Shown in pieces: positions 13,990 to 54,918 of a stretch of 64,000 bases of DNA (its first letter is position 1; each line of letters begins with the position of its first letter). Made by a program: the position numbers and the translations under genes. This DNA comes from Octopus sinensis (lineage: Eukaryota). The notes under the pieces were generated by a model. That model was not told the origin of the DNA. It saw only the letters and a program-made list of their open reading frames with translations, and did no database searches. The DNA is taken from assembly GCF_006345805.1 (NCBI RefSeq), contig NC_042999.1:86800001-86864000 (forward strand). Reading direction: 5' to 3'.

Positions 13990-14053
<64 letters not shown>

Positions 14054-14735: not shown

Positions 14736-14804
<69 letters not shown>

Positions 14805-15484
14805 GCCTTTGACTTTAGTATCCAAAGTTTTTTTTAACCCAGTATTGTCATGTTATTATTTATAGCTTTATTTGTTTTCAGATCTAATATTCCCATAAAG
14901 CAATTGTTTCACATGCCCTCAAAGCTTATAAATTTTAATATCATATATATATATATGTAAAAGAAAAGAATATATATATATATGTATGTATATATAGTTC
15001 AAAATTTACAGAAAATGAAAGACGAAGACAAGTGGAGGAACAACAAGTAGGTGTATTAGTTTAATGCTCCTGAAGAATGGAAAAAATTTTGACAATTCGA
15101 GCCTATGCTCTTTATCTAACTTATAGTAAATCTTTTTGAAGAAACACTTTTTATTTTTCTTCTTTTAAGAATATATTTTTGTTTGATATCCTAATTCCAA
15201 ATGTATGCAAGTTCAATTCTGTAAAAATTTGTACACAAATTTGAATTTTTGTAATCCCTTTTCAGTTTCTACTCAAACATAATCCCTACCCTAACTCAAA
15301 ATTGTAATCCTAAGTGCTAACATAAAACCCTAACATTAGATACTAACCCTCAGTGGATCGAGAAAGAGTAAGATATGAAAGATGTGTGTAGAGAAAGGAG
15401 AGAGAGAGTGAGAGAGAATGAGAAAGACAAAGAGTGAGCGCAGAGCGAGAAAAAGCGTGATATGAAAGACACTTGCGTGTGTTT

Positions 15485-15527
<43 letters not shown>

Positions 15528-26958: not shown

Positions 26959-29900
26959 TGTCACATCACTAATATGCTGCTGAGCCAAGGTTAAGAGGAA
27001 CAAGAAGGTATCTTTGTCTGCTTACAAGTGCTTAGGCATTTAGGGAGAGCATGGTACATGCTGTTAAGTCATACTTGCTTGTAAGTGACATCTGTGCTTC
27101 CATCCCAGATATGTCATACATCTGATCAATTTTCAAGCTGTACATTCTGTATTTAGTTTAGTGTTGCAATTGCTTGAACCCTAGTAGGATGGGTGTCCTT
27201 GATAATACATTAACCTGATAAATTATTTATAGATCAGTGATAGATTTTTTTGCCAAATAACAATGAAATATGTAGCAGCTCTAACTTTCATTTAATATCT
27301 TTACAGACTTACCTAATTCCTACAAAGTGAAGTTGATGTCAATGACGATAAAGAAACCTATACCAGATACAGTAACACCTGTTGATGAAAGTACACTGAG
27401 TAAATCTGAGTATTTACATCAGTACCAAGCATTAAGAATGGAAAAATCTATGTTTGTATATTATATGTCTTTTTTTGTTTTTTAATCTCTAGTTATTGCT
27501 TGTATATACTTCTATGTTTTGTTTTACAATTTCTGATCTTCATTGGGCACATTAACACAGTAAGCCTATTAGGCCATTGGCTAGTGGGGGTCATGGTGCA
27601 CCCTGCTTGTGATTTACTTTAATGAGTATATTCATGTAGCCCTGGGTCTAACAAGTCAGAAAATTGATGTTGCCTGCAAAAAAACTGGGATGGAAGATAC
27701 CTCACCATGGACTTTTTGACCACACCCACTTTTACAGCTGGAGGCAGAAAATTAGGGGAATGGAAAATTCTAACAGCTCTAACTTTGCAACTCTTTGCCA
27801 AAATATTTCAAATGACCACTTAAAATGATTGCCTGGTCAAGATCTACAATGATAAATGAATTTATTCTGTAAAAATGTCACCAGAGGTTAAAAGGTCATG
27901 AACTTTGACCTTTACTTATAATACCTCACATTCACGGGTTTTATTTATCACTAACACCATAAAACGTTTTTTTTTTATTGAAAATGAATCCAAATGAAGG
28001 TTTACATGTGCTTTTTAATACCAGAAGTAAAAAAAAAATTGAAAAGAAGTAATGTTTATGCTGTGGAATGTGAGATATTTCTGCATTTTTACATACTGTT
28101 TTGTATGTATTGCTGAATGTGTCAAATAGAAGTAAGGCAAAATCTAGCAAGTCTTTGGAATCTTTCCTTGAATCATTGCAGATTACCACAGATGATATTT
28201 GAGTTGATCTATAAAATGAAGAATCAAATTATGCAAATATTTTCATCAAAGAGGTCATTGAAGTCAAAAGTAAACAAAAGTCGACCCTACCTACTGCCTT
28301 AGCAGTTTGTTATCCATGGTCATTATGAAATGTGCCATATAATTTTAATATTGAAACAAATGCCAGCTTGTATGATACTTTCTATCTCTCAAGTTTAAAC
28401 AAGATCCATTTCAAGTCTTGCAGCAGTTACCTTCCTCCCTGGTTGGTACATATACAGGATTAAAACAATGGATGTACAAGTTTGCTTTAAAGTTGAGTTA
28501 GAAATGTCAGCTGAGCACCCTTCAGATTATTAAAATTTGAATTAACACATTTCCAATAAGCATTTATCCAAATTCTTGCCTAGACGCAGGAGTGGCTGTG
28601 TGGTAAGTAGCTTGCTAACCAACCACATGGTTCTGGGTTCAGTCCCACTGCGTGGCATCTTCGGCAAGTGTCTTCTGCTATAGCCCCGGGCCGACCAATG
28701 CCATGTGAGTGGATTTGGTAGACGGAAACTGAAAGAATCCTGTCGTATATATGTATATATATATATGTATGTGTTTGCGTGTCTGTGTTTGTCTCCCTAG
28801 CATTACTTGACAACTGATGCTGGTGTGTTTACGTCCCCATCACTTAGCAGTTTGGCAAAAGAGACCGATAGAATAAGTCCCGGGGTCGATTTGCTCGACT
28901 AAAGGCAATGCTCCAGCATGGCCACAGTCAAATGACTGAAAAAGTAAAAGAGTAAAGAGAGTAAGAGAGTTGTATCTTATTTTCATGACAGTTATATCTG
29001 TTCTTAGTTTTATTAACTCTGTAATGCATTGGACTTCATCCTGTCCACCTATGTCCCATAATTGTCAAAGATGATAACATTATTTGTAAACCATCTTTTA
29101 CATTCAGGAGTCATTTCAAGTGTCCGATTAATAATCATCACCATTACTTTCAGTATCACTGTCCGATTCTACTCTGTCAAGGAAATCCCTTTCACTAAGT
29201 TCACTGCCACTATCAGGGTCAGAATCTGATGCACAAGTTTCATCTTCAAATTCTTCTTCCAGAATATCCACCAACTGATGGGGCATCACTTCACCCTCTG
29301 CCCACTCCAGCTTCGTGATTCCAGCTTCCATTGTCTATCCATGTCGTTTGTCTGGTCTAGGCACTGAAGGCTTTGTAATGTTTGCAAGCTTCCATATCCT
29401 GGTCTGGAAGTTACTTTAGCGAACAGATGCTCAAGGACATTTCTACATGGGGGTAGTAAAGTGAGATTGAATAACTTAGATTTTGTGAAATCATCCTATG
29501 CCCCACACTTTGCTCACAAGGTTGTGAACCACAATGTATTCACCTTTTTCATCTTTTTGTTACCATACAACTCACATATGAACCTCTCCAGTGCTTTCAT
29601 CACCTCCTCGTCAACTTCATCTGTTTTAACGACTTTCAGTCCCTTCACTTTCCCCTCCCCTTTGAAAGCATTGGTACTATCGCACCCGGTGAAGGCATGA
29701 TAACCCAGTCAGCTTGGTCACATTGATACAGCATCGTGTGTTGCCCTTTCCAGTTTTAAATAGAATTTGAAGTCCTTCCAGAAATCTAGCATGGTGAAGT
29801 AAGATGAAAAATATACCTGAATTGGGACTCTTCACACGAATGGATTTGCATCTCTGTTCTTTGGCACACATACAATACAGGATCACATGACTGTCAGTTT

Positions 29901-35400: not shown

Positions 35401-38400
35401 GGATTTAGTGGATTTGTCATGTATGTATGTGTGTAAAATTTTTTTCAGAATGAGATAAAAAAACCCAAGGCTGTGAAGTTTTAGAACAGTTATAAAAAGA
35501 AGGTCTTACAGCTGTTTCCAGGCTATTTATTATATCCCTTCATTGGAGACAGTGTGAGAAAATGCTTAAGCAATAGTTAATTTAGATAAGATACCAGATA
35601 GAGAGTGAAGTGGAGGAATGAAAATAGATGCAAGATACGTTTGCTTTGGCATGGTTTCTGCAGTTGTATGCTCTTCCTAACATCAACCAAACACTTTACA
35701 GAATGTATTGGGTGCTTTTTATTTGGCGCCAGCACTAGTGAAGTTACCAAGTAACTTGTAAGACAAGCCCCTCAACTGAGAAGTGTGAAGTAGTATTGTG
35801 AGAAGTGGCTTTATGCCTATACTAGTCATTATTCTCTCCCTCTTCGTTTACCTTTTGACAAAGCATGTGATCCTTTCATTAGTAATGAAGTTAAGTTACA
35901 CAGAATTGTTACTCTAAGATTAAACTAAAATAGTATTTACCAAGGAAAGAGAATATTAAAATGAAGAAATAAAATTATAAAAACAAATGCATAAAAATAA
36001 ATAGATTAAAGTTGTATTTTTAACAGTAAAGATAAAAGTTCAGTTATTGATTTGAGATTAATATCTTTGAAATCTTGCAGATCTGATATCAAATTTGCAT
36101 ATCATTGCATTATATTGGCAGTTTATATTGCAGTTCACTCTATCAATACCAATAATATTTACATTGTGTTTCAATTATAAAATATTTGTATTATTTTTCA
36201 TTTATGTCTTAATTTATATAATGTCTCAATGTTGTAGTCTACCCCCGAGGACACACTAGCAAGTATTATTGATGGCAATGAAGTCAGTCACAGGTTTAAA
36301 AGTATTTCAGGTAAATTGATGTTCCCTCCACAATTACGGTTTTTCAACCAGCTTCAGTTTTCTTCATTTCCTACTCTAGAATGAACATTGGGCCCCACTG
36401 AGGTGATGACAAGTGACCGAGACCTTTGGAGATATGCTGTGCTTGAGAAGACCCAGCAAGCCAAGTGAGACCATAACCATAGCCTATGCCAGTGCAGCAT
36501 AACCAGCCCATTTAAGAGTACCCTTCAATCATTGGGCAATAAACTGCGCTTGCGAAGACTTGTTGAGTCAAGTGAAGTCATTGTCATGGCCAATGACAGT
36601 ACCACCTGATTGGTACCCATGCCAGTGGCACGTAAAAATCACCATTCGTGTGTGGTCGATGCCAGTGCTGCCTGACTGGGTCCCATGCTGGTGGCATGTA
36701 AAAAGCACCATTCAAGCGTGGTTGGTGTCAGTGCTACCTGACTGGCCCTCATGCCAGTGGCATGTAAAAAGCACCCACTACACTCTTGAAGTGGTTGGTG
36801 AAGGGCATCCAGCTGTAGAAACCTTGCCAGATCAGATTGGAACCTAGTGCAACCTTCTGGCTTACCAACCCTCTGTCAAACCATCCAACCCATGCCAGCA
36901 TGGAAAGCGGATGTTAAATGATGACGATGATGGTGATGATGATTAAAATTTCTGAGATCCAGAAGTTACAGCATATGTATATATGGAATCTTACATTTTT
37001 CAGATAGCATGTGATACTCTCATAGACATGTTAATGATATTCTATTTAGCATTTTAATATGTTATTAATGATTGCTTGCATATTTATTCTTAACATATCT
37101 AGGTAGGTTCATATGCACAATATAATGGTTGCTTATGTGTGAATCACTGGAAAAAAAACTTCTCCTTTTTTATGACAACTGTGTGTTCAACACATGGCAT
37201 TCTGGGACACTGGTCTTTCAACTTGTGTCTCATCAGCCCAAAGCAGTTGGAACTATGAGCCTAAACGAAGCTTGTGGCTTTGTTTATACTTTCAGCAAAC
37301 AAATTGTTTTCTGATCAATACTTATATCTGCCAACCAATGTAAAATCATTGTTTGTATCATGTGCAGTGAGATCTGTACATTGGAGGTGAAACACTGGTG
37401 CCCTAGTATGATGTGCCAATGAGTTTAATGTGTTGAAAACACTGTTGTTGTAAAAGGGAGAAGTTATTCTCTTATGATGTACACTACAGCAACTCAGTAT
37501 CTTTTGTGTCTAAACCTGCCTAGACATATTAAGAATAAATAAGCAAATTATAATTCCAGATCTCACTGTACACAGTGCAAATAATAATTTTCTAACATGT
37601 TAATTATTTGAAATCAAAGAAAACTTATGCTGTGGATTTTATATTTATTCCATTTTTATTCTTTATGCTTGTCATAAAGACAGTCCACTTTCTCAACTGT
37701 TGTTTAATATTACAGAGTTGACTTGATGGTGAGTTGGCAGAATCATTAGTATACTGGGTAAAATGCTTAGCGGCATTTCATTCTGAGGTCAAATTCTGCC
37801 AAGGTTGACTTTGCCTTTCGTCCTCTTGAGGTTAATAAAATAAGTAGCTTTTGAGTACTGGGGGTCGATGTAATAGAATTGGCCAAAATTTGAAGCCAAT
37901 ATTACAGAGTTGACTCAAGAACTTTGATTAATGCTATTCAACTTTATTTAGTGAAAGAAGCATAAATATAAGTAAACTAAATATATATAGTTTTTTTGTG
38001 TATATTGAACTTTTAGAATGGCTAGCAATTAGAAACATGAATTCTTGCTACAGGAGTTCAGAATCTAAAAACAATAAAAATGGGATATAATTCTGATAAG
38101 ATCACTTGATTGAAATTATTGGCCAATAGAGGTGATACAGATGTGAGTGGATTTAGTCTGTAATGTCAGTTTATGCAATATGGCTATGTTTCAGTTTTAT
38201 CAAACCTCATCAATGGAGCATTTTCTATTTAGTTGACAAGACTGAGAATGATTTATATAGAGAGAGTGAATGTAGTGATATTAATTATGAATATCAACAA
38301 CAGAGATGAAGGGAAAATACCTTGAGAGAAAGTACTACATGCTATCTCTTAATGTGGTAAGATTTCATTTATACATTTCAGAGATTTGAAAAACTTTGAA

Positions 38401-41400
38401 CATTTAAGATTATCTAAGGCAAATAGTATGCAAAAACTTCCTCTTGGGATGTTTAAAGTCTAGAAACAATTAGCAAGGTAGATAATTCTAATAAAACCTG
38501 ATTAATAGTTTTGGACATAATAAACAATAGAGATTTCAATGTATAAGTTAAGTAGTGAAATCAACAAATTTATTATTGCCTTGGACATCCTCAACAAAGC
38601 AAAGTCTAGACCAGCGTCATGACATTCCTTGTATTTCTATGCATGCATACTTCATATATACTGTGCAACAATGCTAATAAATGACAAATCCTAATAAATT
38701 ACAACCACTTTGAAAAACAGTATCCCCTTTGTATAGAATCTTATGACTAACTCTTAATTCATCATATAACATTAAACAATAACATAAATTAAATTTTGTG
38801 AAAACCAGTATGGGAAATAATTCCGGTAAAATCTGTGATAATGAGCAGAAAGTTTTGTAAGAGAATGCAAAAAGCACTTTACATAACTGAGGAATTTCCT
38901 TTACCAGCTGCCAATCAGAGGTTCTCATAATTTGACACTTTATGGCTGGATCACTACTTCTGATGGTGTCAAGCAACATTAGGAAATATATGGAAACATA
39001 TCATCATCATTGCTTAATGTCCATTTTCCATGCTGGCATGGGTTGGACGGTTTGGCATGAAACTGGCCAGCTGAGAGCTTTCCAGACTCTAATCATCTGT
39101 GATGGCATGGTTTCTGTGGCTGGATGCCATTCTTAATGCCAACTACTTAAAGTATGCTAGATGCTTTTTACATGCCACTGACATGTGTGTTTACAAAGCA
39201 CCCATACAGGTGTATTTACACAGCATTGTACACAGGTGCTTTTTATGTGGCTCCACCACCTGAAAGGACAAGCCTGTATGTATGGAAGACAGTGATTTTA
39301 CTTAGCTTGATATGTCTTTTCAAGTACAATAAATTATTACATTTCCTAGTCCCTTGTCATTTCCTCAGTGAGGCTCATCCATATGCATCACATGACTAAA
39401 CCAGTGCACTCTTCTCTCTTGCACACAACATGTGATGCTTTTTCTACCCAGCTTTCTTCTTAAATCATTTACGCTGTCATGCATGCACATTGACATTACC
39501 CATCCAGCAGAGCATGCTAGCTTCGTTTCTTTCAGGCCTTCACAACTCCTCTGTAGTCAAAGCCCATGTTTCACTGCCATATAACACAGTTGTACACACA
39601 CAGGAATCATACAATCTGCTTTTCACTCTGAGGGAGAGGCCCTTTGTTATCAACAAAGGTAAAGGCTCTCTGAACTTTGCTCAGCACATTCTTATTCTAA
39701 CAACTACACTTTCAGAACTTCATCCTGCTAACTTGCTCTCTTAGGTACCAAAAGCTACCTACTACTTCTAATGATCCCACTGAGCATTTGAAAGAGTGTA
39801 TTGTCTGTGCATGTTTATTACTTATTGTACCTGCACATTTGTCACACACAAAGACAATATTTCTCTGTTAAGTTTCCTGTCATACTGCTACACCTCTTAT
39901 GAAGTCCAAAGCTTGCACTAGATACAATGTACAGAGTTTCTACTAACACCCTTCTTACATATCGAGCAGGGCCAGCTCCCTGAAGGGACTTGTTAGTTGT
40001 CTGTTTTCCTACTTACTAGGACTTTGGTTTTTGCTAAATTAATTCTAAAGCCCTTAGATTCTAGGCCTTGTTTCCACACCTGAAATTTCTTCTCTAGATT
40101 AGGTAGTGATTCAGTTACAAGAACAAGATCAGCAGTGTAGAAGAGCTCTCAAGGACAGCCTATCTTGAATTTCTCTGTTAAGGCCTGGATGACTACAATG
40201 AACAAGAAAGGACTGAGAACTGAGACTTGGTGGACTCCTACCTGTACACTGAATTCATTACTATATTCATTTCCAATCTTCATCTTACTGGCAGCATCCC
40301 CGAACATGGCTTGTACATCTCTTACTAACCATTCACCTATCTCTAGCTTCTGCATAAGGGAACAGGTGATCTTGTCAAAGGCTTTCTTCATGTCAACAAA
40401 ATCCAAGTACAGAATTTTTTTTTTTTTTTTGGCTAATTTTTTCTCTTGCAGTTGCCAAACCAGAAATATAGCCAGATTTTTACCCATTTTGTTTTCTCAA
40501 CTACTCCTGTGAAAAGGATGAACAGTGATCAAACTGGAGCTTATTTTTGGAAGATTGGCTTCAAAGCAGAAATGATCATCAATAAACATAGAAAATGAGA
40601 AAAAACAGAAAAGAAAAAAAGATAGAAAGAAGGAAGAAAAAAAGATAGAAAGAAGGAAGAAAAAAAGAGAATTCCTTAACAATAACATACAGCAAATCAT
40701 TTGACTATATGAGTAATATTTTGAATGTCTCGAGAATACATCCCCTCATTTGTTATCTTTTCCTATGATGCCTTAAATTTTATTATTATTTAATGTCCTT
40801 AAGGCGGCAAACTGGCAGAATTATTAGCATGCCGGATAAAATGCTTAGCAGCATTCCATCCATCTTTATGTTCTGAGTTCAAATCCTGCCAAGGTTGACT
40901 TTGCTTTTCATCCTCTTGGGGGTTGGTAAATGAATATCAGTGGAGCAATAAGGTCGATGTAATCAACTTACCCACACTCCCCAAAGTTGCTGGCTTTGTG
41001 TCAAAATTTGAAACCAATATTTAGTGTCCTGGTTAAACTTTTAATTTATACACACAGACATGCACACTCACAATCACACACACATGCACACACACACACA
41101 CACATGTATTTACTCTCAGTTGGCTTGAAATTGTTAATCTAATAAACAAACTACAGAATTGTTTTAGTAATTAACCAAACCTTGTATGATTAGTCCCCTT
41201 AAATTTTGTTCATGTTCCACATCTTCAGAATTTCAAAGATGCATGGAAAGTCCTGAAAATCCCAATGTGAAGAAGCAACCTGACAGATATGGAAGAATTC
41301 AAAAGCCTAGACGTAGGGAATTTCTGTCAGAGAAGAAGCCACATGAACCCCTTAAAAAGGTACACATTTTAACCCTTTCCTGTTTGATATTTGAAACAGA

Positions 41401-42832
41401 AATTAATATTAATTGCTTGGTTTGGGTGGTGAGCTAGTAGAATTGTTAGCATGTCAAGTAAAATGCTTAGTGGCATTTTGTCTGTCTTTATGTTCTGAGT
41501 TCAAATTCCACCAAGGTCAACTTTGCTTTTCATCCTTTCAGGGTCAATAAAATAAGTACCAGTTGAACACTGGGGTCGATGTAATAGACCTACCCACTTC
41601 CCTGAACTTGCTGAACTTGTGCCAAAATTTGAAATCAATATTTATTGCTTGTTTGAATTATGAAACTTTTGTCTACATTTCTATTTTAGCATGATTGTCA
41701 TAACGTTCAGCCTGTCTCAGCTCTAATTTAGTTTTCTTTTTAATATAATTTTTGCTCATTTTTTTATCCCTAGTTGATTGTTAATAAAAATTTTAATGGA
41801 TAGGAAAATCGAAAAGCATCCTACCTGTTAATAGGTTCCGCTGATTATTATAACTCAAGTATGTTCACATTAACATTGTTCTCGGTTAGTTCTGATCAAA
41901 GTACTCCTATGACATGCAACTTTCTTTACACAGAATGCAGTTATGTCATGTCTTCATTACAGAGAATAACATTGCGCGTTCTGGTATACATTAATGAATT
42001 GTAAGAGATGCAGTATGTATTCTGTTCACTGTCCAATCTATCTCTATAGGCCAGTAGATTCTGATCATGTCAAAATGCTACCATTAACTTTATTGCTGCT
42101 TCATTTCCAGATTGTAACTGTAGCACCAGCTTTCATCACCAGTGATGACCTTCTGTAAAATGTTCAGATCAACTTCCAACTGTTCTTTCAGTTCACAACA
42201 TGTATTCAGTTGTGACTACTTTCGATCTTCTTTGAGCAATTAAGGCACACATTTTGCTACTACACTTTTCATTCACAATTCCTTGCTCAAAATTTGTTGG
42301 CAGGAACTCCAGGATACACCAGTTGTATCAACAAGTTCATCAATTGTTCAGTGACAGTCCTCTAAGATCAGTTCAGGAGTTTTCATGATGTTTTCATTTG
42401 TTCAGGAGGTAGATTGTCTCCCTGATTGAGGTTGGTCTTCAAGCAACAAGTGACCATTCCTAAAGCATGAAAACCACTCAGAAACTTGTGTTTTGCTCAT
42501 GGCAGTGTCCTTGTAAGCTGTTTGAAGCATGACAACTGTTTCAGCCACCATTTTCCCCAGTAGGAAACAGAATTTCATGGAAGTATGCTGTTTCTGCATT
42601 TCAGCCATCGCAAAAATCGGGGAAAAATGGGGAAAAGCAATGCAAAACAAAGATGCACCATATGACAGTACAACTTCACTTGATGAAGCTGGTTGATAGC
42701 CCAATGTTTGAGAGCAGCATCAAGTGGCTTCTTGCGGCAGAAGCCTGAACTACAACAGGCTTTTCTGGTTACTTTTGGGTGCCCCCTCATTCATAAATGT
42801 ATGTGTGTGTATACACACACATGCACGCGCGT

Positions 42833-42873
<41 letters not shown>

Positions 42874-45800
42874 TATGCATATATTAAATGGCACACATTT
42901 CAACTTAGAATTTGAAACAGAAACTTATGTAATCGCTTGATTCTGTTATTATTGTTTTGATTACGTTTCTATTCTAGGCTGATAAACACTGTACAACAAA
43001 TTTCAGGGTCAAGAAAAAAAACATAGTTCTCATGTACATTTTATTATGAAGTTGATTTTGCTAAATTTGAAATTTGTAACAAAAATTTCCCATCACATCA
43101 CATTTTCATCTAAACTACTGACTTAATAACTATGCAATTTATACCGATTTCCACAATGCTATAAATATATTTTGCTCCCAAAGTCAGATCAAATATGTCC
43201 ATTGTAATTAATTCATAAATATATAATGAATTGGCATGTTTGTTAGTATTATATCATGTATTAACCTACATTTTAGTATTTACTTCATTTATGAGACATC
43301 TTAAGTGTTTAAAGCTTCAGCTTCCAGCAGAAGTCAACCAGTGCAGCTGCGCTCCAGTTTCCTTTATACCTGTTTTCCATTGATGCTATATCTTGATGGG
43401 ACCTCTCTCCATGCTCATCACTCACAACTCCTGCATTCTCTGAGAAGGACAGATGAGAATGAAGAAAGTGTATCTTCAGTGATATATTGCGTCCAATATC
43501 TTGGTAGCACTTGATTAGGCTCTCCACTATACTCACTCACTGGGTCACTTGGTGCTTTCCCAGAAGTTCTTTGCAATCATCTTTAAATGCATGCCAGGCC
43601 ACTAGCTCAGTTTCATCCATTGTCATCTTGAAGACCTCATCAACCATAAGTTGACGAATCTGAGGGCCTACGAATATGCCCTCTTTAATCTTGGCATCAC
43701 TTATTTTAGGGAAGATCACCTTGAGCTACTGGAAACATGGCTTGTTATGTTGCAGTGCTTTGGTAAATTGCTTTATTAGGCTCAGTTTTATATGTAGTGG
43801 TGGCAAAATGATTTTCTCCTCCTTAACTAGTGGCTCATAATTTACATTATGGCATCCAGGTGTCATAGTTTCTCCGAGGTGGCCATTCTTAGCATACATA
43901 ATGTTCTGATCTAGCCCTACTGTCCCACTTGCAAAGGAAGCACATGATGTCTTCAGTTTGTAGCCCATTAAGCAGGGATACTACTTTTAAGTATGCACAA
44001 ATAAGCCACTCATGCTCCATTTAATTTATGTGGTTTAGAATAAAAGTGAGGTTCTCATATATTTCTCTTAAAATGACTGAGTGAGCAATTGGAACTGAAG
44101 TGTGCAACAGAACTGCTTTTATGCTATAAAGGGATGCATCTATGAATAATCTCCACCCATTTGGTTCATAAGTCAGCTTAGGGGAATTGAATAGGTCCCT
44201 GATATCATTACAATAAGTCAAGTTGTTTTCCAAAGTGAAGAATTGCTATAGATCTGCAGAATGCTTCCTAAATACTGTTATTTGAGCATTTTTATCCAAC
44301 AGGTTCCATTATTGTAGACATAAGGCCAGGACTTCACTCTGTTGCTTGGTAAGTGTTAGAACACGAAATAGATCATTGAGTTCCTGTTGGGTGATGAGGT
44401 GTGGTTTCTTGTCAGATTTACCATGGATTTGGACCCATATAACTATAAAAATATTGAGTGTATTTTGTAATATTCATAGGTTAGGTTTACAAATACCTTA
44501 GAAACACCCCATTAAATTATATGAAAATCCGTTCATAACTTTTAGAGTTCTCAGTTTTGGTCCAATCCTGTTTGCATTCAATTCCTACAGAACCATCAGT
44601 GTATTTGACATAAGTAAGGTGGTAATTTATGAGACACTGGAGGGTCACAAAAGAAATGGATGTTATATTCATGGTCTACACATAAAATACCCCTAGAAAA
44701 GGTTATTCTCATTTCTGTTTTTTATTTTTTTCATTGTTATCAAGTCAATCTTTCTGTAAGTATCAGCTATGACTTTTCCTTTTAATATAATCTTTGCTCT
44801 TGTTTTCTCAGTTTAGCTTTAATAAAAATATCAGTTAATATGAATTACAGTTTGGATATATCCTAGCATAATCAGATCAACTCAAAATAAAAGATTCTTG
44901 CATTTTGTTTGTCACTTCTATCTCTTCAAATTCCACCTGTAATAACTTTTATTGTTTATGAACTACAATGTTTTTATGATCTTGAGCCATAACATCTGTA
45001 CACAAACATTATCACTGCCTTTAATCTGGCTATTAGCTCCAGTGCACAGAGTAAATGTCATAATTATTTGGTTATTGTTATACCATATTTCAGACCAATT
45101 TTTTTTTAGATCAAATCCTATCATATTGTTTCTTCATGGCTTTTTCACATATAGTGCAAGGGGAGTTTTTCTAGCTACATAATTTACAGAATAATGGCCT
45201 CTGAAAAATATATTTCCTCTCGTAAACAACATGAACTTTCTCTCATATTTTCTCAGACCTATTCATCTCACTCAACACTTCACAGAATAGCACCCTTATC
45301 TAATTCATTTGTTATTTAGATAGATCTGAGATTAGTGATTAAGGTATTCAGCTTGTGATTGTAAGGTCATAAGTTCGATTCCTGGTAGCATGTTGTGTCC
45401 TTGAGCAAGACACTTTATTTCTCATTGCTCCAGTTCACTCAGCTGACAAAAATGAGTTGTACCTCTAATTCAAAGGGCCAGCCTTGTCACACTCTATCGT
45501 GCTGAATCTCCCTTTGAACTATGTTAAAGGTACACATGTCTGTAGAATGCTTAGCCACTTGCATGTTAATTTCCTAAGCAGGCTTTTCATTTGACTGGAT
45601 CAAGCAGAACACACATTGTTATAATTGAAAGAATGAGGAATGTAGGGTTTCTCTACAGGTAACTTAGACATTGCTTCTTATGTGAAACCCACATCAACCA
45701 AAATATTAGTCTTGTTATATCCATTATTATGGAATTTGAGTTTTCAATACTTATCAACTTATAACACACACACACACAAGGTTTGCTTTTCATCCTTTCT

Positions 45801-48800
45801 ACTTTAACACCTCCTTGATTTAATTAATAAAACTTTGACTACATTTCTATTTTAGCCTGAACATTCCAGCAGTCCGACAGTAAGTATCAGCTATGTTTTT
45901 CTTATTACCTCCGCCTTAGCGAAGGCAGAGGTATTGTTTTTAGTTGTGCTTGTTTGTTTGTTTTTTTTTTGCCCATGGACAAAATATCTTAAGAACCGCC
46001 AGATGTATTCAGATGAAACTTTCAGTGATGTTTGGCCTCGTGACTGGAATGAACTGATAAGATTTTGGGATCGATCCAGTAACAGACAAGGACTCTGGAT
46101 TATTTTTCTTGTTTCTCTACTTAATTTTTGAGAGCAGGTGGATTCATTTTTAGTATTCACATTTGTGAGAGCAGTCAAGTTTATTTCAGATATTCTCATT
46201 TTAAAAATCATCTCTGGCTAATTGTTGAGAGGATGTTGTTCTTGCCTTGGTGGAGGTTTGCGCTCTCTGATTGCTCTTGTTTCTTTCAATATAATTTTTC
46301 ACTTGTTTTATCAATTGACCATTAATAAAAATTCTACTTAATGATATGAAAGCTGAAGGTAATATAAGCAGTTACTATGAATATCAGTATCATCTTTGTT
46401 TTAATGTCTACTTTTCCATACTTGCAGAGGTTTGGCATTTTGGTTTCTTGGTTCATGCTCTTTCTTGATGGAGCTGAGGTCACTTCAAGTTAGTGCTCCC
46501 AGAGATGTCATCATATGTAGAGCCAAGTCCACCAGTGCTCTCTATCACTGACAGTCCCATATCAGCCCATCTGCATCATCCAAGGTGACATCAAGCCTCA
46601 GGAGATCTTCCCCAATCATGTTCAGCCATCTGTTGCAGGGCCTGCCATGTAGCTTATTCTAGCCTGCAGCTAAAAATTAGCTTAGACAGAATTTCTGTGA
46701 CTAGATGTTTTTTCTATTGTTGACCCCTACCTACTTCTAATCAAAGTAATATTTTCCCAAGTCCTTTGAACATCAAACAGTGCCATGGCCAGATATGTTC
46801 TTCACAGAAAATTGCATACGGCTTGTGTAACGAGGAAGTTTGTTTACAATTAGTGTGCATGTGTATGTATGTATGTATTTACCTATGTATGTATGTATGT
46901 ATGTATGTATGTATGTATGTATGTATGTATGTATATATGTATGATGTATGTACGTATTTACCTATGTAGGTATGTACGTCAAAGTTTCCTCTCAGGGCGC
47001 TTACACTTTGTCGTGTATGCACACTAACATAACACATCCAGCAGAGAATACTAGCTTCATTTCTTTCAAGCCTTTCTTTCATGTCCTCAGAAGTCACTAC
47101 CCATCTTTCACTGCCATGTAGTATGGCTGTTCATAGACATGCATCATACAGTCTACCTTTCACTTTGAATGAGAAGCCCTTTGTTACCAGCAGAGGTAGG
47201 AGCTCTCTGAACTTTGCCCAGGCTATTCTTATTCAAGCAGCTACACTCTCAGAACATCCACCCCAGCTATTGACTTGGTCACCTAGGTAATGGAAGCTAT
47301 CAACTGCTTCTAGTTTTTCCCACTGGCATGTGCCGGAAGCTGTTTTCTGCACATTTTCCATGTTTATTGCCCCTGTGCATCTGCCACACACAAAAACTAT
47401 CTTCCCTTTGATATTGCTGCACCTCCTATGTGTCCTTAGCTTACACTGGGTACATCTTATGGAGTTTCTACCTACCCCTTTTCTACAGATTTTGCAGGGC
47501 CATCTACCTGAAGGGATTTGTGATTTGTCTGCCTTCCTTACTTACTAAGACTTTGTTTTTTGCTAGATTGACACTAAGTATCTTTGATTCTAGACCTTGC
47601 TTCTGCACCTAAAACGTCTTCTGTAGTCCTGGTAGTGACTCAGCTATTAAAGCAAAGTCATCAGTATAGAGGAGCTTCCAGTGGCAACCTGTCTTGAATT
47701 CCTCTGTTATTGCCTGGAGGACTATGATGAACAAGAGGGGGCTGAAGATGACTGATCCTTGGTGGACCCCTACTTCTACCCAGAATTCGTCACTATACTC
47801 ATTGCCAACCCTCACCTTGCTGACAGCATCCCTCTACATGGCTTGTACAGTTCTCAGTAACCACTCATATGTCACTAGTTTCTGGATTGACCACCAGAGC
47901 AGAGATCGGGGGAATCTATCAAAAGCCTTCTCCATGTCAATGAAAGCCAAGTACAGAGGTTTATCTTTGACTAGAAATTTCCCCTGCAGCTGCCTTGCCA
48001 GAAATATAGTATCATTGGTGCTTCTCCCTGGCACAAACTCAAACTGCATCTCGTCTAAACTAACTCTCTCCCTAATTAGTTGGGCTATGACCTCCATGAC
48101 TTTTATCGCCTGATCCAACAATTTGATACCTCTGTAATTATTCGTATTTAATGCATTACCTTTACCTTTGTAGCAGTTGACTATGATGTTGATACACCAG
48201 TCATTGGGTATGACTCCTTCATGTATCACCTGATTGACTATACGGGTGACTAGACTGTAGCCAACACCACCAGATATTTTAAGTATTTCTGCAGTGATAC
48301 CTGATGTGCCGAGTTTTTCCCTGTCTTCATAACCTTAATTGCTTTATCTACCAAGGTACTGTCAATTTGGATAGCTAGTGACTCTGTTGGGTCGACATTT
48401 GGCAGACTCTCTTTCTCCCATTCATTCTCTTCATTTGGAAACATTTCATAGTGGCGTTTCCAAGTCTCTCTCTTTCCATCCTCATTAAATGCATGTGAGC
48501 CATCATCCATGTGGACACATTCTCTCTCCTATGACATCATGATTCTCTCACACTTTACTTGCCACTGGCACAGGAGCCAGTCAGGGGTACTGGCATCGGT
48601 CACAATCGGTTGGTGCTTTTTACATGTTACTGGCACGGGAGCCAGTCAGGCGGACCTGGCATCGACCACATTCGGATAGTGCTTTTTACCCCTCATTGAG
48701 TAAGTATTACATCAGAGTATCTGCTAGCTAAGAAACATATGTGGGTTCATATCTCATCAATGGCCTTTGACTTTTACCATCTAAAAAGGGCTTTTCACCC

Positions 48801-51800
48801 TAATATTTGCATGCTATTATTTATAGCTTTATATGCTTTAAGATCCACTGTTCCACACCAAATAATGTCTTGATTTATTGAAATTGTCTTGGTTCCAGAG
48901 AAGATAGAACAATTATACAATGGTAATGGGATCATCTTTCAAATGAGAAAGAATATAACCACAAAACTCATGAATTATCAAAAAATTGATATGCCATTAA
49001 GAAAAGACATTTTGATTGCCTGGAGACAAGTGACAGCTGCAAACACTTGTTTCTGCTTCAATAGGCATCATCAGCACAGCAGTTGCTTTACCTTGTCTCC
49101 AGCAGAATGAGGTACTTGGTTATATACTTAGTTATAACCCTCGCCATATCACGGTTCACCTATTGCAGTTCACCTATTGCGGTTTATTATTTGAGCCTAC
49201 GTTTATTCCTCCATGTGTTGTTTTGCATTTATAATAAAATAAATATATACAAATTATGGCTGTGTGGTAAGTAGCTTGCTTACCAACCACATGGTTCCAG
49301 GTTCAGTTCCATTGCATGGCACCTTGGACAAGTGTCTTCTCCTATAGCCTCAGGCCGACCAAAGCCTTGAGGATTTGGTAGACGAAAACTGAAAGAAGCC
49401 CGTCATATATATGTATATGTGTGTGTGTGTGTGTGTGAGTTTGTGTGTCTGTGTTTGTCCCCCCCAACATCACTTAACAATCGATGCTGGAGTGTTTATG
49501 TGTGATAGAATAAGTACTAGGCTTACAAAGAATAAAGGTGGTACTCCAGCATGGCCACAGTCAGATATCTGAAACAAGTAAAAGAGAGTACAGTACTGTT
49601 TCTACTTCACCGATTTTCACCAATTGCACCTGGGATAGTCAAGGGATTATTGTATACAAAAGAGTAGGACACATTTATGGCTTAAGTCATTTGCATCTAT
49701 TTATACACATACACACACATATATACACATGTGGATACATATATGTATGCTATGCATAGAATTATTTATTACATTCTTACTACATTAAGGCCAAAATGTT
49801 CCTTGTTGATACAGTGACCCTTTAATCTTTAGAAGACATTATCATATTTTTATATATACCATAATATTCCATAAACAGGCATGGCTGTGTAATAACAAGT
49901 TTGCTTCCCAGCCATATGGTACTGGGTTGAAACTCACTGCATAACATCTTAAGCAAGTGTCTTCTACTATAGCCTGGGCTGACCAAAGCTTTGTGAGTGG
50001 ACTTGGTTGACAGAAACTGAAAGAAGTCTGTCACATGTGTTTGTGTGTGTGTGTGTGCATGAGTATGTATTTGTATTTCCTTGTTTTGACATTGCATGAT
50101 TGTTGTAAATGACTGTTGTTATACTAGCAGTGTCATTCATTTTTAGTATTTTGTGAAAACATGTCTTGCTTGGAAACAAGTGAAGATTGGCAATAGAAAG
50201 GGAATCTGCTCTTAGAAAAATTTGCCTCAGTAAACTTTGTCCAACCCATGAAAGCATGGAAAAATGGAGATCAAAATGATGATGATGATGACCTAATTTT
50301 CTAAAATAGAATTTCATTCAGACTAAATGTGTTACATATTCTTACTTTTAATGATGTGTGTTTGGTCTTGTTTTGCAGGCTTTATTTTCTTTATTTGAAT
50401 CTGGTGAACAGAAAATGTTTTCTCTGTCAAAAAAAGTGACACATCTATTAAATGAATATAAACAAATCTCAAAGATTATTATGAGTCATAATGAAACTGT
50501 TTCTCGAACTCCAGCAAGTGTCATTTCAACACCTTCAAGAGTACCACAATATAGAGATGATTCCTCTTATGATATTCCTCCATCAAAAATACCTTCAACT
50601 GTATCTACAGCTCAGGCTTCAGAGCTTATGTGCACATTATCAAAATCTATAGTACAAAGGACAACTCGAAGTGCATCTGCAGAGCCGTCACAAACGTCTA
50701 CAGTGTTCCAAGAATATGTCAAAAAAATCTTGTCTGCTGATTGGTTCCAGAAACGTTTTGGTGACCTTACAGATGTAAGTAATTTATAAACTTATATAAA
50801 ACATGACATGTAAACACAAACACACAGACATCCTCTAGTGTTCTTTAGTTTGCTTAATATACAAATAGTGTGCTAGTGTGTGTGTGTGTGTGTGTGTGTG
50901 TAAAGAGAGAGAGAGAGTGGAAGCAAGGCCTAGTATTGGTGTTTATTCTGTTATAGGGGCTGGTTGATTTTCTAATTCTAAATATGCTTTATTGAGGTCT
51001 GTTCCTGAAGTTACTCAAAGTATTTCTTATGAAGTTAGAATATCATTAATTTTAATGACTTGTTTATTATTGGTATGAAGAATTAATTTGGTTAATTTAT
51101 TGAAATTTAGGAAAGACTGAAGTCCTAGTTTGTAGGAAAGAAGAAAAATCACCAACCTCTTCTGGGAAATGGCCCTGCTTGTAATGTAGAAAAGGTGTAG
51201 TTGAGAATCCCATACAGTGTACCCAGTGCAAGCTATGGATACATAATAGGTGTAGTGGTATCATAGGAAGGTTAATAGAGAAAGTAGTCTTTGTATGTGA
51301 CAGACCTGCAGGTACAATAAACACAAAGAATGTACAGGAAATAGACTTCCTCAAATGTCTGGAGCAATCCTTAGAAGTAGTAGATAGCTTCTGTTACCAA
51401 GGTGACCAAGTTAACTGTGGAGGAGGTTGCTCTGAAAATGTAGCTGCTAGAATAAGAATGGGCTGGGCAGAGTTCAGAGAGCTACTGCCTATGTTGGTAA
51501 CAAAGGGCCTCTCCCTCAGAGTGAAAGGCAGATTGTATGATGTCCATGTATGAACAGCTATGCTATATGGCAGTAGGATATGGGCTGTGACTGTAGAGAA
51601 AATGTGAAGGCTTGAAAGAAACAAAGCCAGTATGCTGTGTTGTGTGGGTAATGTCAGTGTGCATATATGAGAGTATAAATGATATATGATAAAAATTGGG
51701 TAAAAAAGGTATCAGATGTAGTGTGCAAGAGAGAAGACTGTGTTGGTATGGTCAAGTGATGTGTATGGATAAGGGCAGCTGCACAAAGGAGTACCAATCT

Positions 51801-52613
51801 CTAACTGTGGAGGGAACCTGTGGAACAGGTAAACCCATAAAGATCTGGGACAAAACGGTAAGAAACGATCTCCAGATGTTGAATCTCACAGCAGAGATGG
51901 CAAGTGATTGAGATTTTTGGTGGTTTGCTGTGCTTCTGAAGACACTTCAAGCTAAGTAGAATCATGGCCATCCATACATACAACCATAATCTGTCTTGTC
52001 AAATCTTCTCAACCCATCATTCCAGGACCCCTCTTCTCACTACCTATGACCACCACCTGCTGCAGGCCCCTCCACTATCTCTCACATGCCTATCTGCACA
52101 TACACTTGCTACAGTCACCTTTCCCCATCTCTAGACATCTCCCCTCACCTCTTATAGAACATCCCCTTCTATCTTCTCTGTACCATTTATTCTCCCCCAT
52201 CCACTCTACTCTTTTACTTGTTTCAGTCATTTGACTGTGGCCATGCTGGAGCACTGCCTTTAATCAAGCAACTCGACCCCGGGACTTATTCTTTTGTAAG
52301 CCCAGTACTTATTCTATCGGTCTCTTTTGCCGAACCGCTAAGTAACGGGGACATAAACACACCAGCATCGGTTGTCAAGCAATGCTAAGGAGACAAACAC
52401 AGACACACAAACACACACACGCATATATATATATATATATATATATACGACGGGCTTCTTTCAGTTTCCGTCTACCAAATCCACTCACAAGGCTTTGGTC
52501 GGCCCGAGGCTATAGTAGAAGACACTTGCCCAAGGTGCCACACAGTGGGACTGAACCTGGAACCATGTGGTTGGTAAACAAGCTACTTACCACACAGCCA
52601 CTGTTTCATCATT

Positions 52614-52650
<37 letters not shown>

Positions 52651-54918
52651 CTGACTGTCTCTCTGTCTATCTTTCTCTGTAATACTATCTCTCCCATCTG
52701 AGAGGTCTTCACCTTGCAAGCTACTTCATGACCCTACTGGTTTTGGTGTCACATAAAAAGCTCCAGTGTTGGTGCTACATAAAAAGCACCCAACTCACTA
52801 AGTAAAGAAGTTGGCATTAGGAAGGACTGGTACTTATTTTATCGACCACGAAAGGATGAAAGGCAAAGTTGACCTCAGTGAAATTTGAACTCAGAACGTG
52901 AAGACGAATGGAATGCCACTAAACATTTTGCCCAGCATGCAAATGATTCTGCCAGCTCACTGCCTTATACATATCATCATCATTATCATCATCATTTAAC
53001 ATCTGTTTTCCATGCTGGTATAGGTTGGATGGTTTGACCACAGCTGGCAAGCTGGGGAGCTGCACCAGACTCCAGTCTGATTTGGCATGGTTTCTATAGC
53101 TGGATGCCCCTTCTTAACACCAACCACTTTACAGTGTGTGCTGGCTGCTTTTATGTGGCATTGCATGAGCACTTTTATGTGGTGTCACATTGGGGCTTTT
53201 ACTTGATGCTATATGGGGACTTTTATGCGGCACTGGCACTTGCAGGTCAATCCTCACCACCACTGTCACATGCTCAGCAATATTTTAGGTGTCATCACAG
53301 TGACATCAAAATCCCTGTGACAAGACAGATTATGTGTGTGAGTGACAGCATCATCACTCATACCTGTAATGTCACCATTATATATAATTTGCTATACACT
53401 TATGATAATGTTTATTATCTCAGATTCCTTTCTGTCAATTAAATCAGTGCTCCACAACTGGTATGCTCTGGCACATTGGTGTGCCACAAGATGATGCTAG
53501 GTGTACTGCAGTGTAACCTGAATGTAATTTTTTCCCCCTATACTTTTAGTTATATTTTTAGTTCAGTTGTGCCACCAAAGTTTGAAAAGAATATAAGTGT
53601 ACCTCAAGTGAAATAAGATTGTGGTGCACTGAATTAAATTACTGCAGCTGATCACAGTCAGCACTATTACATCACCATCACTAGTAGTGTAACATTCTAA
53701 TTGTCACTGTGACATTACCATCATTGTTGTGTGATCATTATCAGCCATGTGACATCATCATCATCATTGTGATGTTCCATACATCATTGTGATATCCCAA
53801 CCATCACCATGTTGATACATTATCATTGTGACAGCATCATCATGTGATTATTGCCAGCAATGTGACAGCACCATCATTATCATTATTGTGACACCATGTA
53901 AATTATTGTGCATTCACATCATCGCTATGACATTATCATTATTGTATGATACTTCTTCAAGTATCACTTGAAAAGGAAAGTGAGAGTAGAGAGGCAAGTT
54001 TTGTCTAGCGAATGTTTCAAAAAAAGATGGGTGAATGTAGCAAGGATGGCATGTATGATTGACGAAGCCACCTTGAGCATAATCCTATGAATCCGGAAAA
54101 ATTTAAAACAGATAGTTACTTACTTGCAAATAAATGTGTTAACATGTGACATTATTGACCGAGGTTACTGTGGTCTTTTCCGTAGTCTTTTCTTTCCACA
54201 GATAAAGCTTATCTGCTTCCCCCTTTACACTTTACATCATGACATTTCTGTGATATATGATCCCTATTGATCTTTTATTTTTACATTTTTACGATCCCTT
54301 TTGATCGAAAACCTACCCCACTTTTTTTTTCTCCCCAAAATTTGTAATTTGTCCAGTCTGTGTGCAGCCCTGCATGGCTAATAAAGAAACATTATCATTG
54401 TATGATCTCTGTCAATAGTGTGACATTAGTATCATCATTGTGACATAAGTTTCTTCTGCATTATTTCTTTACGTGTTATATCATGATATAATTTTCTTGA
54501 ATAAATCCTTGCTTATGTTTATTTTTCTCTTGTTTGATACAGATTCTGACAAACATGGTACACAGTAATGACTTCATCCTTTCCATAATACCATTGCTAA
54601 ATAGTAACTCCATGGAAATAAAATTCAATATTCTTAATACAATCATTGATACTTTCTCTAAATTTGGAGCAGACGACAGAGAAGCAATTGCAGAAGCAAT
54701 TGTCAATCTCTTGAAAGAAGATCCCTTTGATTTAGATTCAGGTGATGAAGATCGAAAAAATCTTATACAGCTTGCAATGTCATCCCTTGAAATTTTTCAC
54801 GTTGAAAATGATGACATGGTTATGCAACATCTGAAACATTACATTTATGGTGATGAAATTATAAGGTATATCCATTATTTTACTTTGTAATTGAACTATT
54901 TATCAGTGTGTTTCTATG

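What the first reader, a model, noticed from the sequence alone, without database searches (positions are those of the whole stretch)
41660..46330. Triplicated 24-nt microexon cassette in the WDR97-like linker
Seen: three homologous units (A about 41660-41790, B 42950-42986 plus 44745-44830, C 45830-45901 plus 46282-46330) share the acceptor (ctacatttctattttag; A=C 17/17, B 19/22) and about 70 nt of downstream intron (tt[t/c]aatataat..tttt..ttaataaaaat). The exon bodies have diverged (HDCHNVQP / ADKHFNLS / PEHSSSPT) and all are phase 0/0. A different transposon later landed in or between each unit (mariner, Chapaev-like, HINE). Inference: local exon duplication built a modular, possibly combinatorial or mutually exclusive microexon array, in which intronic signals are more conserved than the coding bases.
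Basis: partly seen in the sequence, partly recalled or inferred. Interest (0 to 1): 0.78.

Follow-up and report, generated by a model that had tools for sequence, protein, structure and literature searches.

The report
Old intronic triplication with exon-like core
A short stretch of a very long intron in a mollusc-type WD40-repeat gene was copied locally three times and later riddled with transposons; each copy has an exon-looking core, but two cores are broken and nothing shows that any is spliced, so this is most likely ordinary intron turnover, not a new splicing module.

Summary
The repeat is real. Three same-strand copies of a ~165-nt unit (A 41648-41807; B 42936-42983 + 44735-44844; C 45814-45904 + 46281-46351) occur only here in the 64 kb. 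With a later SINE removed, the A-B homology runs further upstream, to about 41351, so it also covers the end and donor of a possible 131-nt exon.

The microexon-array reading does not hold up:
- **Unit A** has lost GTAA of the shared GTAAGT donor.
- **Unit B** is split 6 nt after its AG by a 1.75-kb element. The homology-guided join gives 27 nt, similar to A.
- **Unit C** alone is an intact AG-24 nt-GTAAGT.
- **Flank identity** (71-83%) equals that of scattered SINE copies in the window (72-85%), so the flanks look neutral rather than conserved.
- **The A-B core** diverged like its flanks. Only 19 nt of C's core are aberrant.
- **Decoys:** 21 equally good pseudo-microexons lie in the same intron.

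No transcript or cephalopod ortholog data were reachable. Best reading: an old, decaying intronic segmental duplication (about 0.7). One live microexon in C: about 0.12. A combinatorial array: about 0.03.

The parts
41229..41359 (+). Candidate exon X: 131 nt, acceptor ttccacatcttcag|, donor AAG|GTACAC. Only one frame is open and the exon ends in phase 0. Its last ~9 nt and its donor lie inside duplicated block A.
   Evidence: 43-codon ORF, GC 0.40 against 0.28-0.30 in the flanks, unique in the window, acceptor score 5.2, donor score 0.46. Not validated by any transcript or ortholog.
41351..41419 (+). Upstream part of block A (end of exon X, its donor, and ~60 nt of intron). Homologous to B 42882-42935.
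   Evidence: a local alignment runs from A 41355-41806 (SINE excised) to B 42886-44844. By eye the TTAAA match extends it to 41351 / 42882.
41420..41640 (+). SINE inserted into block A after the A/B duplication. It is flanked by a ~11-bp target-site duplication, TAATTGCTTGG / TTATTGCTTGT.
   Evidence: the family has >=12 copies in the window, B lacks the SINE at the homologous point, and SINE A is 10% diverged from the majority consensus.
41648..41689 (+). Unit A upstream block, ending in the acceptor-like ...ctacatttctattttag.
41690..41713 (+). Unit A core, CATGATTGTCATAACGTTCAGCCT. It is followed by GTCTCA, not GTAAGT, because the shared donor has lost GTAA.
   Evidence: (donor score -8.9).
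41714..41807 (+). Unit A downstream block (TTTTAATATAAT ... TTAATAAAAAT).
41944..42790 (-). Truncated, degenerate mariner transposase remnant between units A and B. Its left end is not defined.
   Evidence: Pfam HTH_48 of Mos1 transposase, E=7.8e-9.
42794..42898 (.). CA-rich microsatellite abutting block B.
   Evidence: The only Rfam matches here are sub-threshold hits to repeat-like miRNA models.
42882..42977 (+). Block B upstream part plus unit B upstream block. It holds a decayed copy of the exon-X donor (AAATG|GCACAC) and ends in the acceptor-like ...ttacgtttctattctag.
42978..42983 (+). Unit B core, left 6 nt (GCTGAT). Homology to A and C stops here.
   Evidence: A aligns to raw B-left up to 42983, and C up to 42982.
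42984..44734 (-). 1.75-kb insertion splitting the B core. It carries frameshifted transposase-like ORF pieces on the minus strand. Its family is undetermined and its right boundary is uncertain (44710-44734).
   Evidence: (no Pfam hit). A possible duplicate of the acceptor region at 44710-44734 is not significant (P=0.14).
44735..44755 (+). Unit B core, right 21 nt (TGTTATCAAGTCAATCTTTCT). Joined to 42978-42983 it gives a 27-nt core (ADCYQVNLS).
   Evidence: similar to the A core, P=0.036. The join is inferred.
44756..44844 (+). Unit B downstream block, starting GTAAGTATCAGCTATG.
45814..45855 (+). Unit C upstream block with an acceptor identical to A's. It is preceded by a degenerate SINE-like fragment (about 45658-45813).
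45856..45879 (+). Unit C core, CCTGAACATTCCAGCAGTCCGACA (PEHSSSPT). This is the only intact AG-24 nt-GTAAGT and the only remaining candidate cassette microexon. Positions 45861-45879 resemble neither A nor B.
   Evidence: (permutation P=0.0008).
45880..45904 (+). Unit C downstream block, left part (GTAAGTATCAGCTATG...).
45905..46280 (.). ~375-nt non-coding insertion in unit C's downstream block, with hairpin-like ends ACCTCCGCC...GGTGGAGGT. Family not determined.
   Evidence: (no Pfam hit).
46281..46351 (+). Unit C downstream block, right part (TTTCAATATAAT ... TTAATAAAAAT).

Best explanation
This is an old local segmental duplication of non-coding intron sequence, now decaying neutrally.

A block of about 165-235 bp lay just downstream of a possible exon (41229-41359), in the ~23-kb gap between the coding exons at 27307-27446 and 50379-75. 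It was copied in place into three same-strand copies; A and B are near-tandem, and C lies about 1 kb further on.

The ancestral block happened to carry, or once carried, an exon-like core: a pyrimidine-rich TAG acceptor, about 24-27 nt, and a GTAAGT donor. Since then the copies have drifted at the neutral rate and collected insertions:
- a SINE into A's upstream part;
- a mariner between A and B;
- a 1.75-kb element inside B's core;
- a 375-nt element 25 nt after C's donor.

A lost its donor through a 4-nt deletion. C's core was rewritten over 19 nt, probably by a single complex mutation.

Shown: the homology, its extent, the broken sites, the divergence levels and the order of events. Inferred: that the cores are pseudo-exons that are not spliced into the mRNA.
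For: 1. **Local, not dispersed.** The only copies in 64 kb are three units within 4.7 kb on one strand.
2. **Homology covers plainly non-functional sequence.** With SINE A excised, A-B homology extends about 65 nt further upstream. There B carries a decayed copy of the exon-X donor (GT changed to GC). Homology stops abruptly at the end of the downstream block.
3. **Neutral divergence.** Unit flanks are 71-83% identical. Dispersed SINE copies in the same window are 72-85% identical pairwise and 77-90% identical to their consensus. The A-B core (15/24 identical plus a 3-nt indel) is no better conserved than its flanks, and most of its codon changes alter the amino acid.
4. **Two of three cores are disabled.** A's donor scores -8.9, and B is interrupted 6 nt after its AG.
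5. **Exon-like looks are cheap here.** A crude splice-site scan finds 21 AG...GT pairs 6-51 nt apart, at least as good as B or C, in the same intron. Five of them are multiples of 3 and open in phase 0. The scan finds 34 such pairs on the + strand and 21 on the - strand of the whole window. Two of three frames are open in every core, so an open phase 0 says little.
6. **Intronic tandem duplication is ordinary at this locus.** A 751-bp-period duplication, 98.6% identical, sits at 14002-15514.
7. **No RNA gene or structure** on the units.
Against: - The ancestral unit had a good acceptor and a perfect GTAAGT, which B and C retain.
- Measured between homologous sites, the reconstructed B core (27 nt) and the C core (24 nt) are both multiples of 3.
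- All three cores are open in phase 0, the phase needed between exon 27307-27446 (or exon X) and exon 50379.
- The cores are richer in G+C (33-50%) than their flanks (about 22%), as exons are.
- Conservation peaks sit on the splice-like sites in the first alignment.
- C's 19-nt aberrant stretch needs a special event.
- No transcript data were available, so non-use is inferred, not shown.
Confidence: 0.7

Rival explanations
1. One live cassette microexon with two dead copies. The ancestral core was a real alternative 24-27-nt exon in the linker. After duplication only copy C (45856-45879, PEHSSSPT) kept working, and A and B decayed into pseudo-exons.
For: - C has an intact acceptor (score 3.1, within the range of this gene's real acceptors, 1.7-6.9) and a GTAAGT donor like 6 of about 13 real donors here.
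- It is 24 nt long and open in phase 0, which fits the phase-0 boundaries at 27446, 41359 and 50379.
- B and C keep the same donor and 3n lengths.
- The cores are richer in G+C than their flanks.
Against: - No constraint is visible anywhere: flanks are at the neutral level and the A-B core evolves like intron.
- Twenty other decoys of equal or better score lie in the same intron.
- No UGC motif lies within 42 nt of any of the three acceptors. The pyrimidine tract is short and there is no CUAAY branch point. UGC motifs near the 3' splice site, long pyrimidine tracts and CUAAY branch points are reported for eMIC-dependent microexons (PMC8797185; sequence read).
- A 375-nt element sits 25 nt downstream of the donor.
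Confidence: 0.12
2. One reading: a modular array of three alternative (combinatorial or mutually exclusive) microexons, kept by selection on shared intronic splicing signals while the coding bases diversify.
For: - Three units share acceptor-like and downstream blocks.
- The cores are open in phase 0.
- C's core has diverged far more than its flanks (P=0.0008).
Against: - A lacks the donor.
- B is split by 1.75 kb just after its AG, and the piece holding B's donor has no AG before it.
- The flanks are not conserved above the neutral yardstick.
- The A and B cores are not diversified relative to their flanks.
- There is no docking/selector-type structure (z>=0), and the spacings are far too long for steric exclusion.
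Confidence: 0.03
3. A dispersed or mobile repeat: the unit is a low-copy non-autonomous element, or part of one, that inserted three times near itself.
For: - B could be read as shared termini around a transposase-like interior, with A and C as internally deleted derivatives.
- The start and end of the unit share a short direct similarity (TTGA..ATTAATAAAA).
Against: - No other copy in 64 kb of very repeat-rich sequence.
- All three copies are on the same strand.
- No terminal inverted repeats or target-site duplications were found at unit ends.
- A-B homology extends beyond the unit into unique sequence next to exon X, as expected for a segmental copy, not a transposition.
Confidence: 0.05
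4. An alternative terminal exon with intronic polyadenylation. The acceptor is used without the donor, translation stops within 13-30 codons, and the invariant TTAATAAAAAT (containing AATAAA) about 90 nt downstream directs cleavage, giving a truncated protein with only the WD40 part.
For: TTAATAAAAAT is the longest invariant run, 11/11 in all three units (permutation P=0.03). In-frame stops follow each core when it is read through (read from the sequence).
Against: AATAAA is expected about 58 times per strand by composition in this AT-rich window (my estimate). The P value is marginal. There is no transcript evidence, and the flanks are otherwise neutral.
Confidence: 0.03

Closest known systems
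Intronic tandem or segmental duplications that carry pseudo-exons (decoy splice-site pairs) and are later broken up by transposon insertions
   Same: Same-strand local copies, homology across non-functional sequence, neutral-level divergence, nested SINE, mariner and other insertions, and exon-like AG...GT pairs that are common in long introns (21 comparable decoys in this intron).
   Different: Nothing essential. The only peculiarities are that the block clips the end of a possible exon and that one copy's 19-nt core was rewritten.
Tandem exon duplication giving alternative or mutually exclusive exons (Dscam, Mhc, 14-3-3zeta type; Kondrashov & Koonin 2001, Letunic et al. 2002; cited from my own knowledge)
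   Same: Local duplication of an exon-sized, frame-preserving segment together with its splice-site flanks. The copies lie in one intron and on the same strand.
   Different: In known clusters all copies keep intact splice sites, the exons are more conserved than the introns, and transcripts contain them. Here two of three copies are disabled, the cores are no better conserved than the flanks, and no transcripts are known.
Bilaterian neural microexon programme (SRRM3/4 eMIC-dependent exons; PMC8797185)
   Same: Size class (24-27 nt, a multiple of 3), location in a presumably disordered linker, and no AG in the 42 nt before the acceptor.
   Different: No UGC motif near the 3' splice site, a short interrupted pyrimidine tract without UCUC, and no CUAAY branch point (compare). 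The host is a WD40-repeat gene with no known neural role. Inclusion is untested.
Schistosoma micro-exon genes (MEGs; DeMarco et al. 2010; cited from my own knowledge)
   Same: Tandem symmetric microexons that could vary a protein by exon choice.
   Different: MEGs are small secreted-protein genes built almost wholly of many microexons. This gene has ordinary 90-400-nt exons and at most one usable microexon.

Membership tests
Cassette microexon | AG acceptor with pyrimidine tract and a usable GT donor bounding the segment | tested here: inconclusive
   Met for C (acceptor 3.1, donor 2.3). Met for B only after removing a 1.75-kb insert in silico. Not met for A (donor -8.9). Crude scores. Real sites of this gene for comparison.
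Cassette microexon | Length <=27-51 nt, frame-preserving and open in the phase set by neighbouring exons | tested here: met
   C is 24 nt and reconstructed B is 27 nt. A is 24 nt only to a non-homologous GT. All are open in phase 0. Neighbouring boundaries are phase 0. This is weak evidence: 2 of 3 frames are open in each core, and 5 other in-frame open decoys lie in the intron.
Cassette microexon | Presence in mature transcripts | not testable with these tools
   No cephalopod transcripts or proteins are in the searchable collections. Papers gave nothing.
Cassette microexon | Exon and flanking intron conserved above the neutral level | tested here: not met
   Tested among paralogous copies only: flanks 71-83% against a SINE yardstick of 72-85%, and the A-B core at 63%. 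Orthologs were not available.
eMIC/SRRM4-dependent neural microexon | UGC motif close to the 3' splice site, long UCUC-rich pyrimidine tract, strong CUAAY branch point (PMC8797185) | tested here: not met
   No TGC in the 42 nt upstream of any of the three acceptors. The tract is tttctatttTAG. There is no CTAAY, only CTACA or TTACG (sequence; criteria).
Mutually exclusive tandem exon cluster | All copies have intact splice sites and the same length | tested here: not met
   A's donor is lost, B is interrupted, and lengths are 24 / 27 / 24 with non-homologous ends.
Mutually exclusive tandem exon cluster | A mechanism for exclusivity (competing RNA pairing, or introns too short to splice) | tested here: not met
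   The units fold no better than shuffled sequence on either strand (z from -0.3 to +2.1). Even before the insertions, spacings were >150 nt.
Dispersed transposable-element repeat | Copies elsewhere; terminal repeats and target-site duplications at unit ends | tested here: not met
   No further copy in the window (next hit E=2.3). No terminal inverted repeats or target-site duplications. A-B homology runs into unique flank. The genome-wide copy number is not testable here.
Local segmental (tandem) duplication | Same orientation, proximity, homology through non-functional sequence, roughly uniform neutral divergence | tested here: met
   The one exception is the 19-nt stretch of C's core.
   The best relative is an unnamed partial Candidula unifasciata protein (32% identity over 66% of the query, E=4.5e-66; exon-by-exon match). 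PDB hits are generic WD40 proteins. No WDR97 sequence was available to compare.

The most novel reading that the evidence does not exclude
A lineage-specific tandem duplication created paralogous microexons in the disordered linker of a WD40-repeat gene. At least C, and perhaps a second copy in some individuals or relatives that lack the insertions, is alternatively included. That would be a caught-in-the-act example of microexon birth, diversification and death by transposon insertion.
Probability: 0.08. Interest if true: 0.5.

Novelty: already known. Interest (0 to 1): 0.15.

Why it matters
If any of the cores were spliced, this would be a datable example of how microexons are born by local duplication and lost through donor decay or transposon hits, in a lineage known for transcript diversification. 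As it stands, the value is mainly cautionary. In long, AT-rich, repeat-laden introns, exon-looking AG...GTAAGT pairs are common. A duplicated piece of intron will then show 'conserved splice signals' without any selection. Insert boundaries also have to be set by homology before short exons are reconstructed. Here the wrong join created a false picture of three diverged 24-mers.

Tried and rejected
- **Protein database searches** with the linker exon (no hit) and with concatenated exons (only a gastropod partial ortholog plus generic bacterial WD40 proteins). No cephalopod sequence is present, so isoforms could not be checked.
- **Candidula locus L001**. The gene model ends at the homolog of exon 27307-27446. 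The next 10 kb hold no homolog of exon X or of the exons at 50.4, 54.5 and 58.5 kb. It gives no help on the linker.
- **PDB sequence search**: generic WD40 hits only, so WDR97 identity is untested.
- **Papers**: nothing on cephalopod microexon duplication or on WDR97 function.
- **Rfam, tRNA scan and folding**. The ncRNA-cluster idea (for example intronic snoRNAs, suggested by the CTGA after the AG) is rejected: no family hit on the units and no excess structure.
- **Terminal inverted repeat and target-site duplication search** at the ends of the B and C inserts: inconclusive. The family of the 1.75-kb insert is not identified.
- **My own earlier idea that the duplicated block was 'SINE + unit'** is rejected for A and B. 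B has the pre-insertion sequence, and SINE A has its own target-site duplication. For C, a degenerate SINE-like piece upstream remains unexplained.
- **A possible fourth partial unit** after the SINE at 40799-41037: similarity is too weak.
- **A possible long duplication of the acceptor region** on the right of the B insert: not significant (P=0.14).
- **Search for a template of C's aberrant 19-mer** in the window: none.
- **Building a full exon chain** between 27446 and 50379: candidates lie mostly in transposon-like sequence, so this was left unresolved.
Full report
**Setting.** The window is AT-rich (64% A+T) and full of SINEs, microsatellites and transposon remnants. A multi-exon WD40-repeat gene runs on the + strand. 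Its exons at about 1.7, 4.4, 10.7, 13.8, 17.6, 20.4, 21.3, 23.6, 25.7 and 27.3 kb match, in order, a partial protein of the land snail Candidula unifasciata (P0001).

- That protein ends at the homolog of exon 27307-27446 (...MEKSMF). This supports a phase-0 donor, TTT|GTATAT, at 27446.
- The next clear coding exon starts in phase 0 at 50379.
- The finding lies in the ~23-kb gap between these two exons.
- No cephalopod protein or transcript is in the searchable collections. The 'WDR97-like' label was not testable, because PDB hits are generic WD40 proteins.

**The observation.** The repeat is real and local.
- The acceptor-like 17-mer occurs exactly at 41673 and 45839, with three mismatches at 42961, and nowhere else.
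- The downstream blocks are shared.
- A three-way alignment gives a unit of about 165 nt running from CTTG... to ...TTAATAAAAAT plus about 15 nt.
- A profile built from the units finds only these pieces in the window (E from 1e-8 to 1e-35; next hit E=2.3).

**Anatomy corrected.** Four points change the picture.

1. *A SINE hides part of block A.* The SINE just upstream of unit A (41420-41640) is a later insertion with its own ~11-bp target-site duplication. With it excised, A-B homology continues about 65 nt further upstream, to 41351 in A and 42882 in B.
   - That stretch includes TTAAAAAG|GTACAC, the 3' end and donor of a candidate 131-nt exon X (41229-41359).
   - Exon X has a strong acceptor and a weak donor, a single open frame ending in phase 0, GC of 0.40 against about 0.29 in its flanks, and is unique in the window.
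   - In B the copy reads AAATG|GCACAC.
   - So the duplicated block was about 235 bp of 'exon end + intron', not a neat exon cassette.
   - Homology ends sharply after the downstream block in all copies.

   - Raw alignments show that homology on the left of the insert stops at 42983 (GCTGAT).
   - The best reconstruction is a 27-nt core, GCTGATTGTTATCAAGTCAATCTTTCT (ADCYQVNLS). It compares with A's CATGATTGTCATAACGTTCAGCCT (HDCHNVQP) at 15/24 identical plus a 3-nt indel.

3. *Unit A has no real donor.* B and C share GTAAGTATCAGCTATG. A has GTCTCAGCTCTA, with GTAA missing, so its '24-mer' ends at a non-homologous weak GT (score -8.9).

4. *Insert identities.* The insert between A and B is a truncated mariner (HTH_48). 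The 1.75-kb insert in B carries broken transposase-like ORFs of no recognisable Pfam family. The ~375-nt insert in C is non-coding.

**Is anything conserved?**
- Pairwise identity of the flanks is 71-83% upstream and 71-80% downstream.
- Unrelated copies of the SINE family in this window are 72-85% identical to each other and 77-90% identical to their consensus. The flanks are therefore at the neutral level for sequence of this age.
- SINE A is 10% from its consensus, and the units are about 13-15% diverged per lineage. This fits the inferred order: duplication first, then the SINE.
- The A-B core is no better conserved than the flanks.
- Only C is odd. After the shared CCTGA, 19 nt (45861-45879) match neither A nor B (permutation P=0.0008), and no template for them exists in the window. 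One complex mutation is the simplest cause.
- The apparent conservation peaks on the splice-like sites rest on three sequences. The longest invariant run, TTAATAAAAAT, is only marginally unusual (P=0.03).

**Exon-likeness.** C's acceptor and donor look like real sites of this gene. But a crude position-weight scan finds 21 pairs of equal or better quality in the same intron, five of them in-frame and open. Across the whole window it finds 34 on the + strand and 21 on the - strand. Each core is open in two of three frames. The features reported for eMIC-dependent microexons are absent: UGC near the 3' splice site, long UCUC tracts and CUAAY branch points (PMC8797185). No RNA family, tRNA or excess structure lies on the units.

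**Conclusion.** The most likely account (about 0.7) is an old intronic segmental duplication that carried a pseudo-exon and has since decayed and been invaded by four transposons. Intronic tandem duplication is ongoing at this locus, as the nearly identical 751-bp repeat at 14002-15514 shows.
- A surviving cassette microexon in C, with A and B as dead copies, cannot be excluded (about 0.12). Points in its favour are the retained GTAAGT, the 3n lengths of B and C, the phase-0 fit and the G+C-richer cores.
- A dispersed repeat (about 0.05) and an intronic polyadenylation exon (about 0.03) are minor rivals.
- Transcript mapping, a genome-wide copy count and orthologous introns would settle the matter.

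Noticed in passing
window 41229-41359 (+): Candidate 131-nt coding exon X: acceptor ttccacatcttcag|, donor AAG|GTACAC, one open frame (FQRCMESPENPNVKKQPDRYGRIQKPRRREFLSEKKPHEPLKK) ending in phase 0. It is richer in G+C than its flanks and unique in the window. Its acceptor is phase 1, so at least one more exon (phase 0 to 1) would be needed between it and 27446.
   Followed up: partly
window 14002-14763 and 14753-15514: Nearly identical tandem duplication in another intron (period 751 bp, 98.6% identity). It is either a very recent duplication or an assembly artefact.
   Followed up: partly
window 41420-41640 (and >=11 other sites, e.g. 40799-41037, 23226-23447, 37718-37917): An abundant ~220-nt SINE family with the core ...CAAGGTCAACTTTGCTTTTCATCCTTTCAGGGTC.... 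The copy at 41420 has a clean ~11-bp target-site duplication and is the least diverged (10% from the majority consensus).
   Followed up: yes
window 45658-45813: A very degenerate SINE-like stretch, with its core CAAGGTTTGCTTTTCATCCTTTC intact, abuts unit C at the same point (..|CTTG) where SINE A abuts unit A. This could be a hot spot hit twice, or C could derive from A after the SINE arrived. Unresolved.
   Followed up: partly
window 41786-41796, 44821-44831, 46321-46331: TTAATAAAAAT, which contains the poly(A) signal AATAAA, is invariant in all three units and is the longest invariant run (permutation P=0.03). It could be chance in AT-rich DNA.
   Followed up: partly
window 42984-44734 (-): 1.75-kb insert with frameshifted ORF pieces (...LHIKLSLIKQF..., ...SDEHGERSHQDIASMENRYKGNW...) that look like a eukaryotic DNA-transposase family, but with no Pfam match even at E<=10. 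Class undetermined.
   Followed up: partly
window 47236-48530 (-): Reverse-transcriptase-like ORF pieces (e.g. ...EFWVEVGVHQGSVIFSPLLFIIVLQAITEEF...) just downstream of the units. Similar fragments lie at about 5.5-6.2 kb, 39.4-40.5 kb and 51.1-51.9 kb. The intron is largely retroelement debris.
   Followed up: no
L001 (Candidula unifasciata CAJHNH020000406.1) 43653-43748 and 49577-53801: The snail gene model stops at the homolog of exon 27307-27446. A separate 779-residue gene is called 6 kb downstream, so the snail ortholog may be split into two models. None of the four octopus-side query exons (X and those at 50.4, 54.5 and 58.5 kb) found a match in the 10 kb examined.
   Followed up: partly
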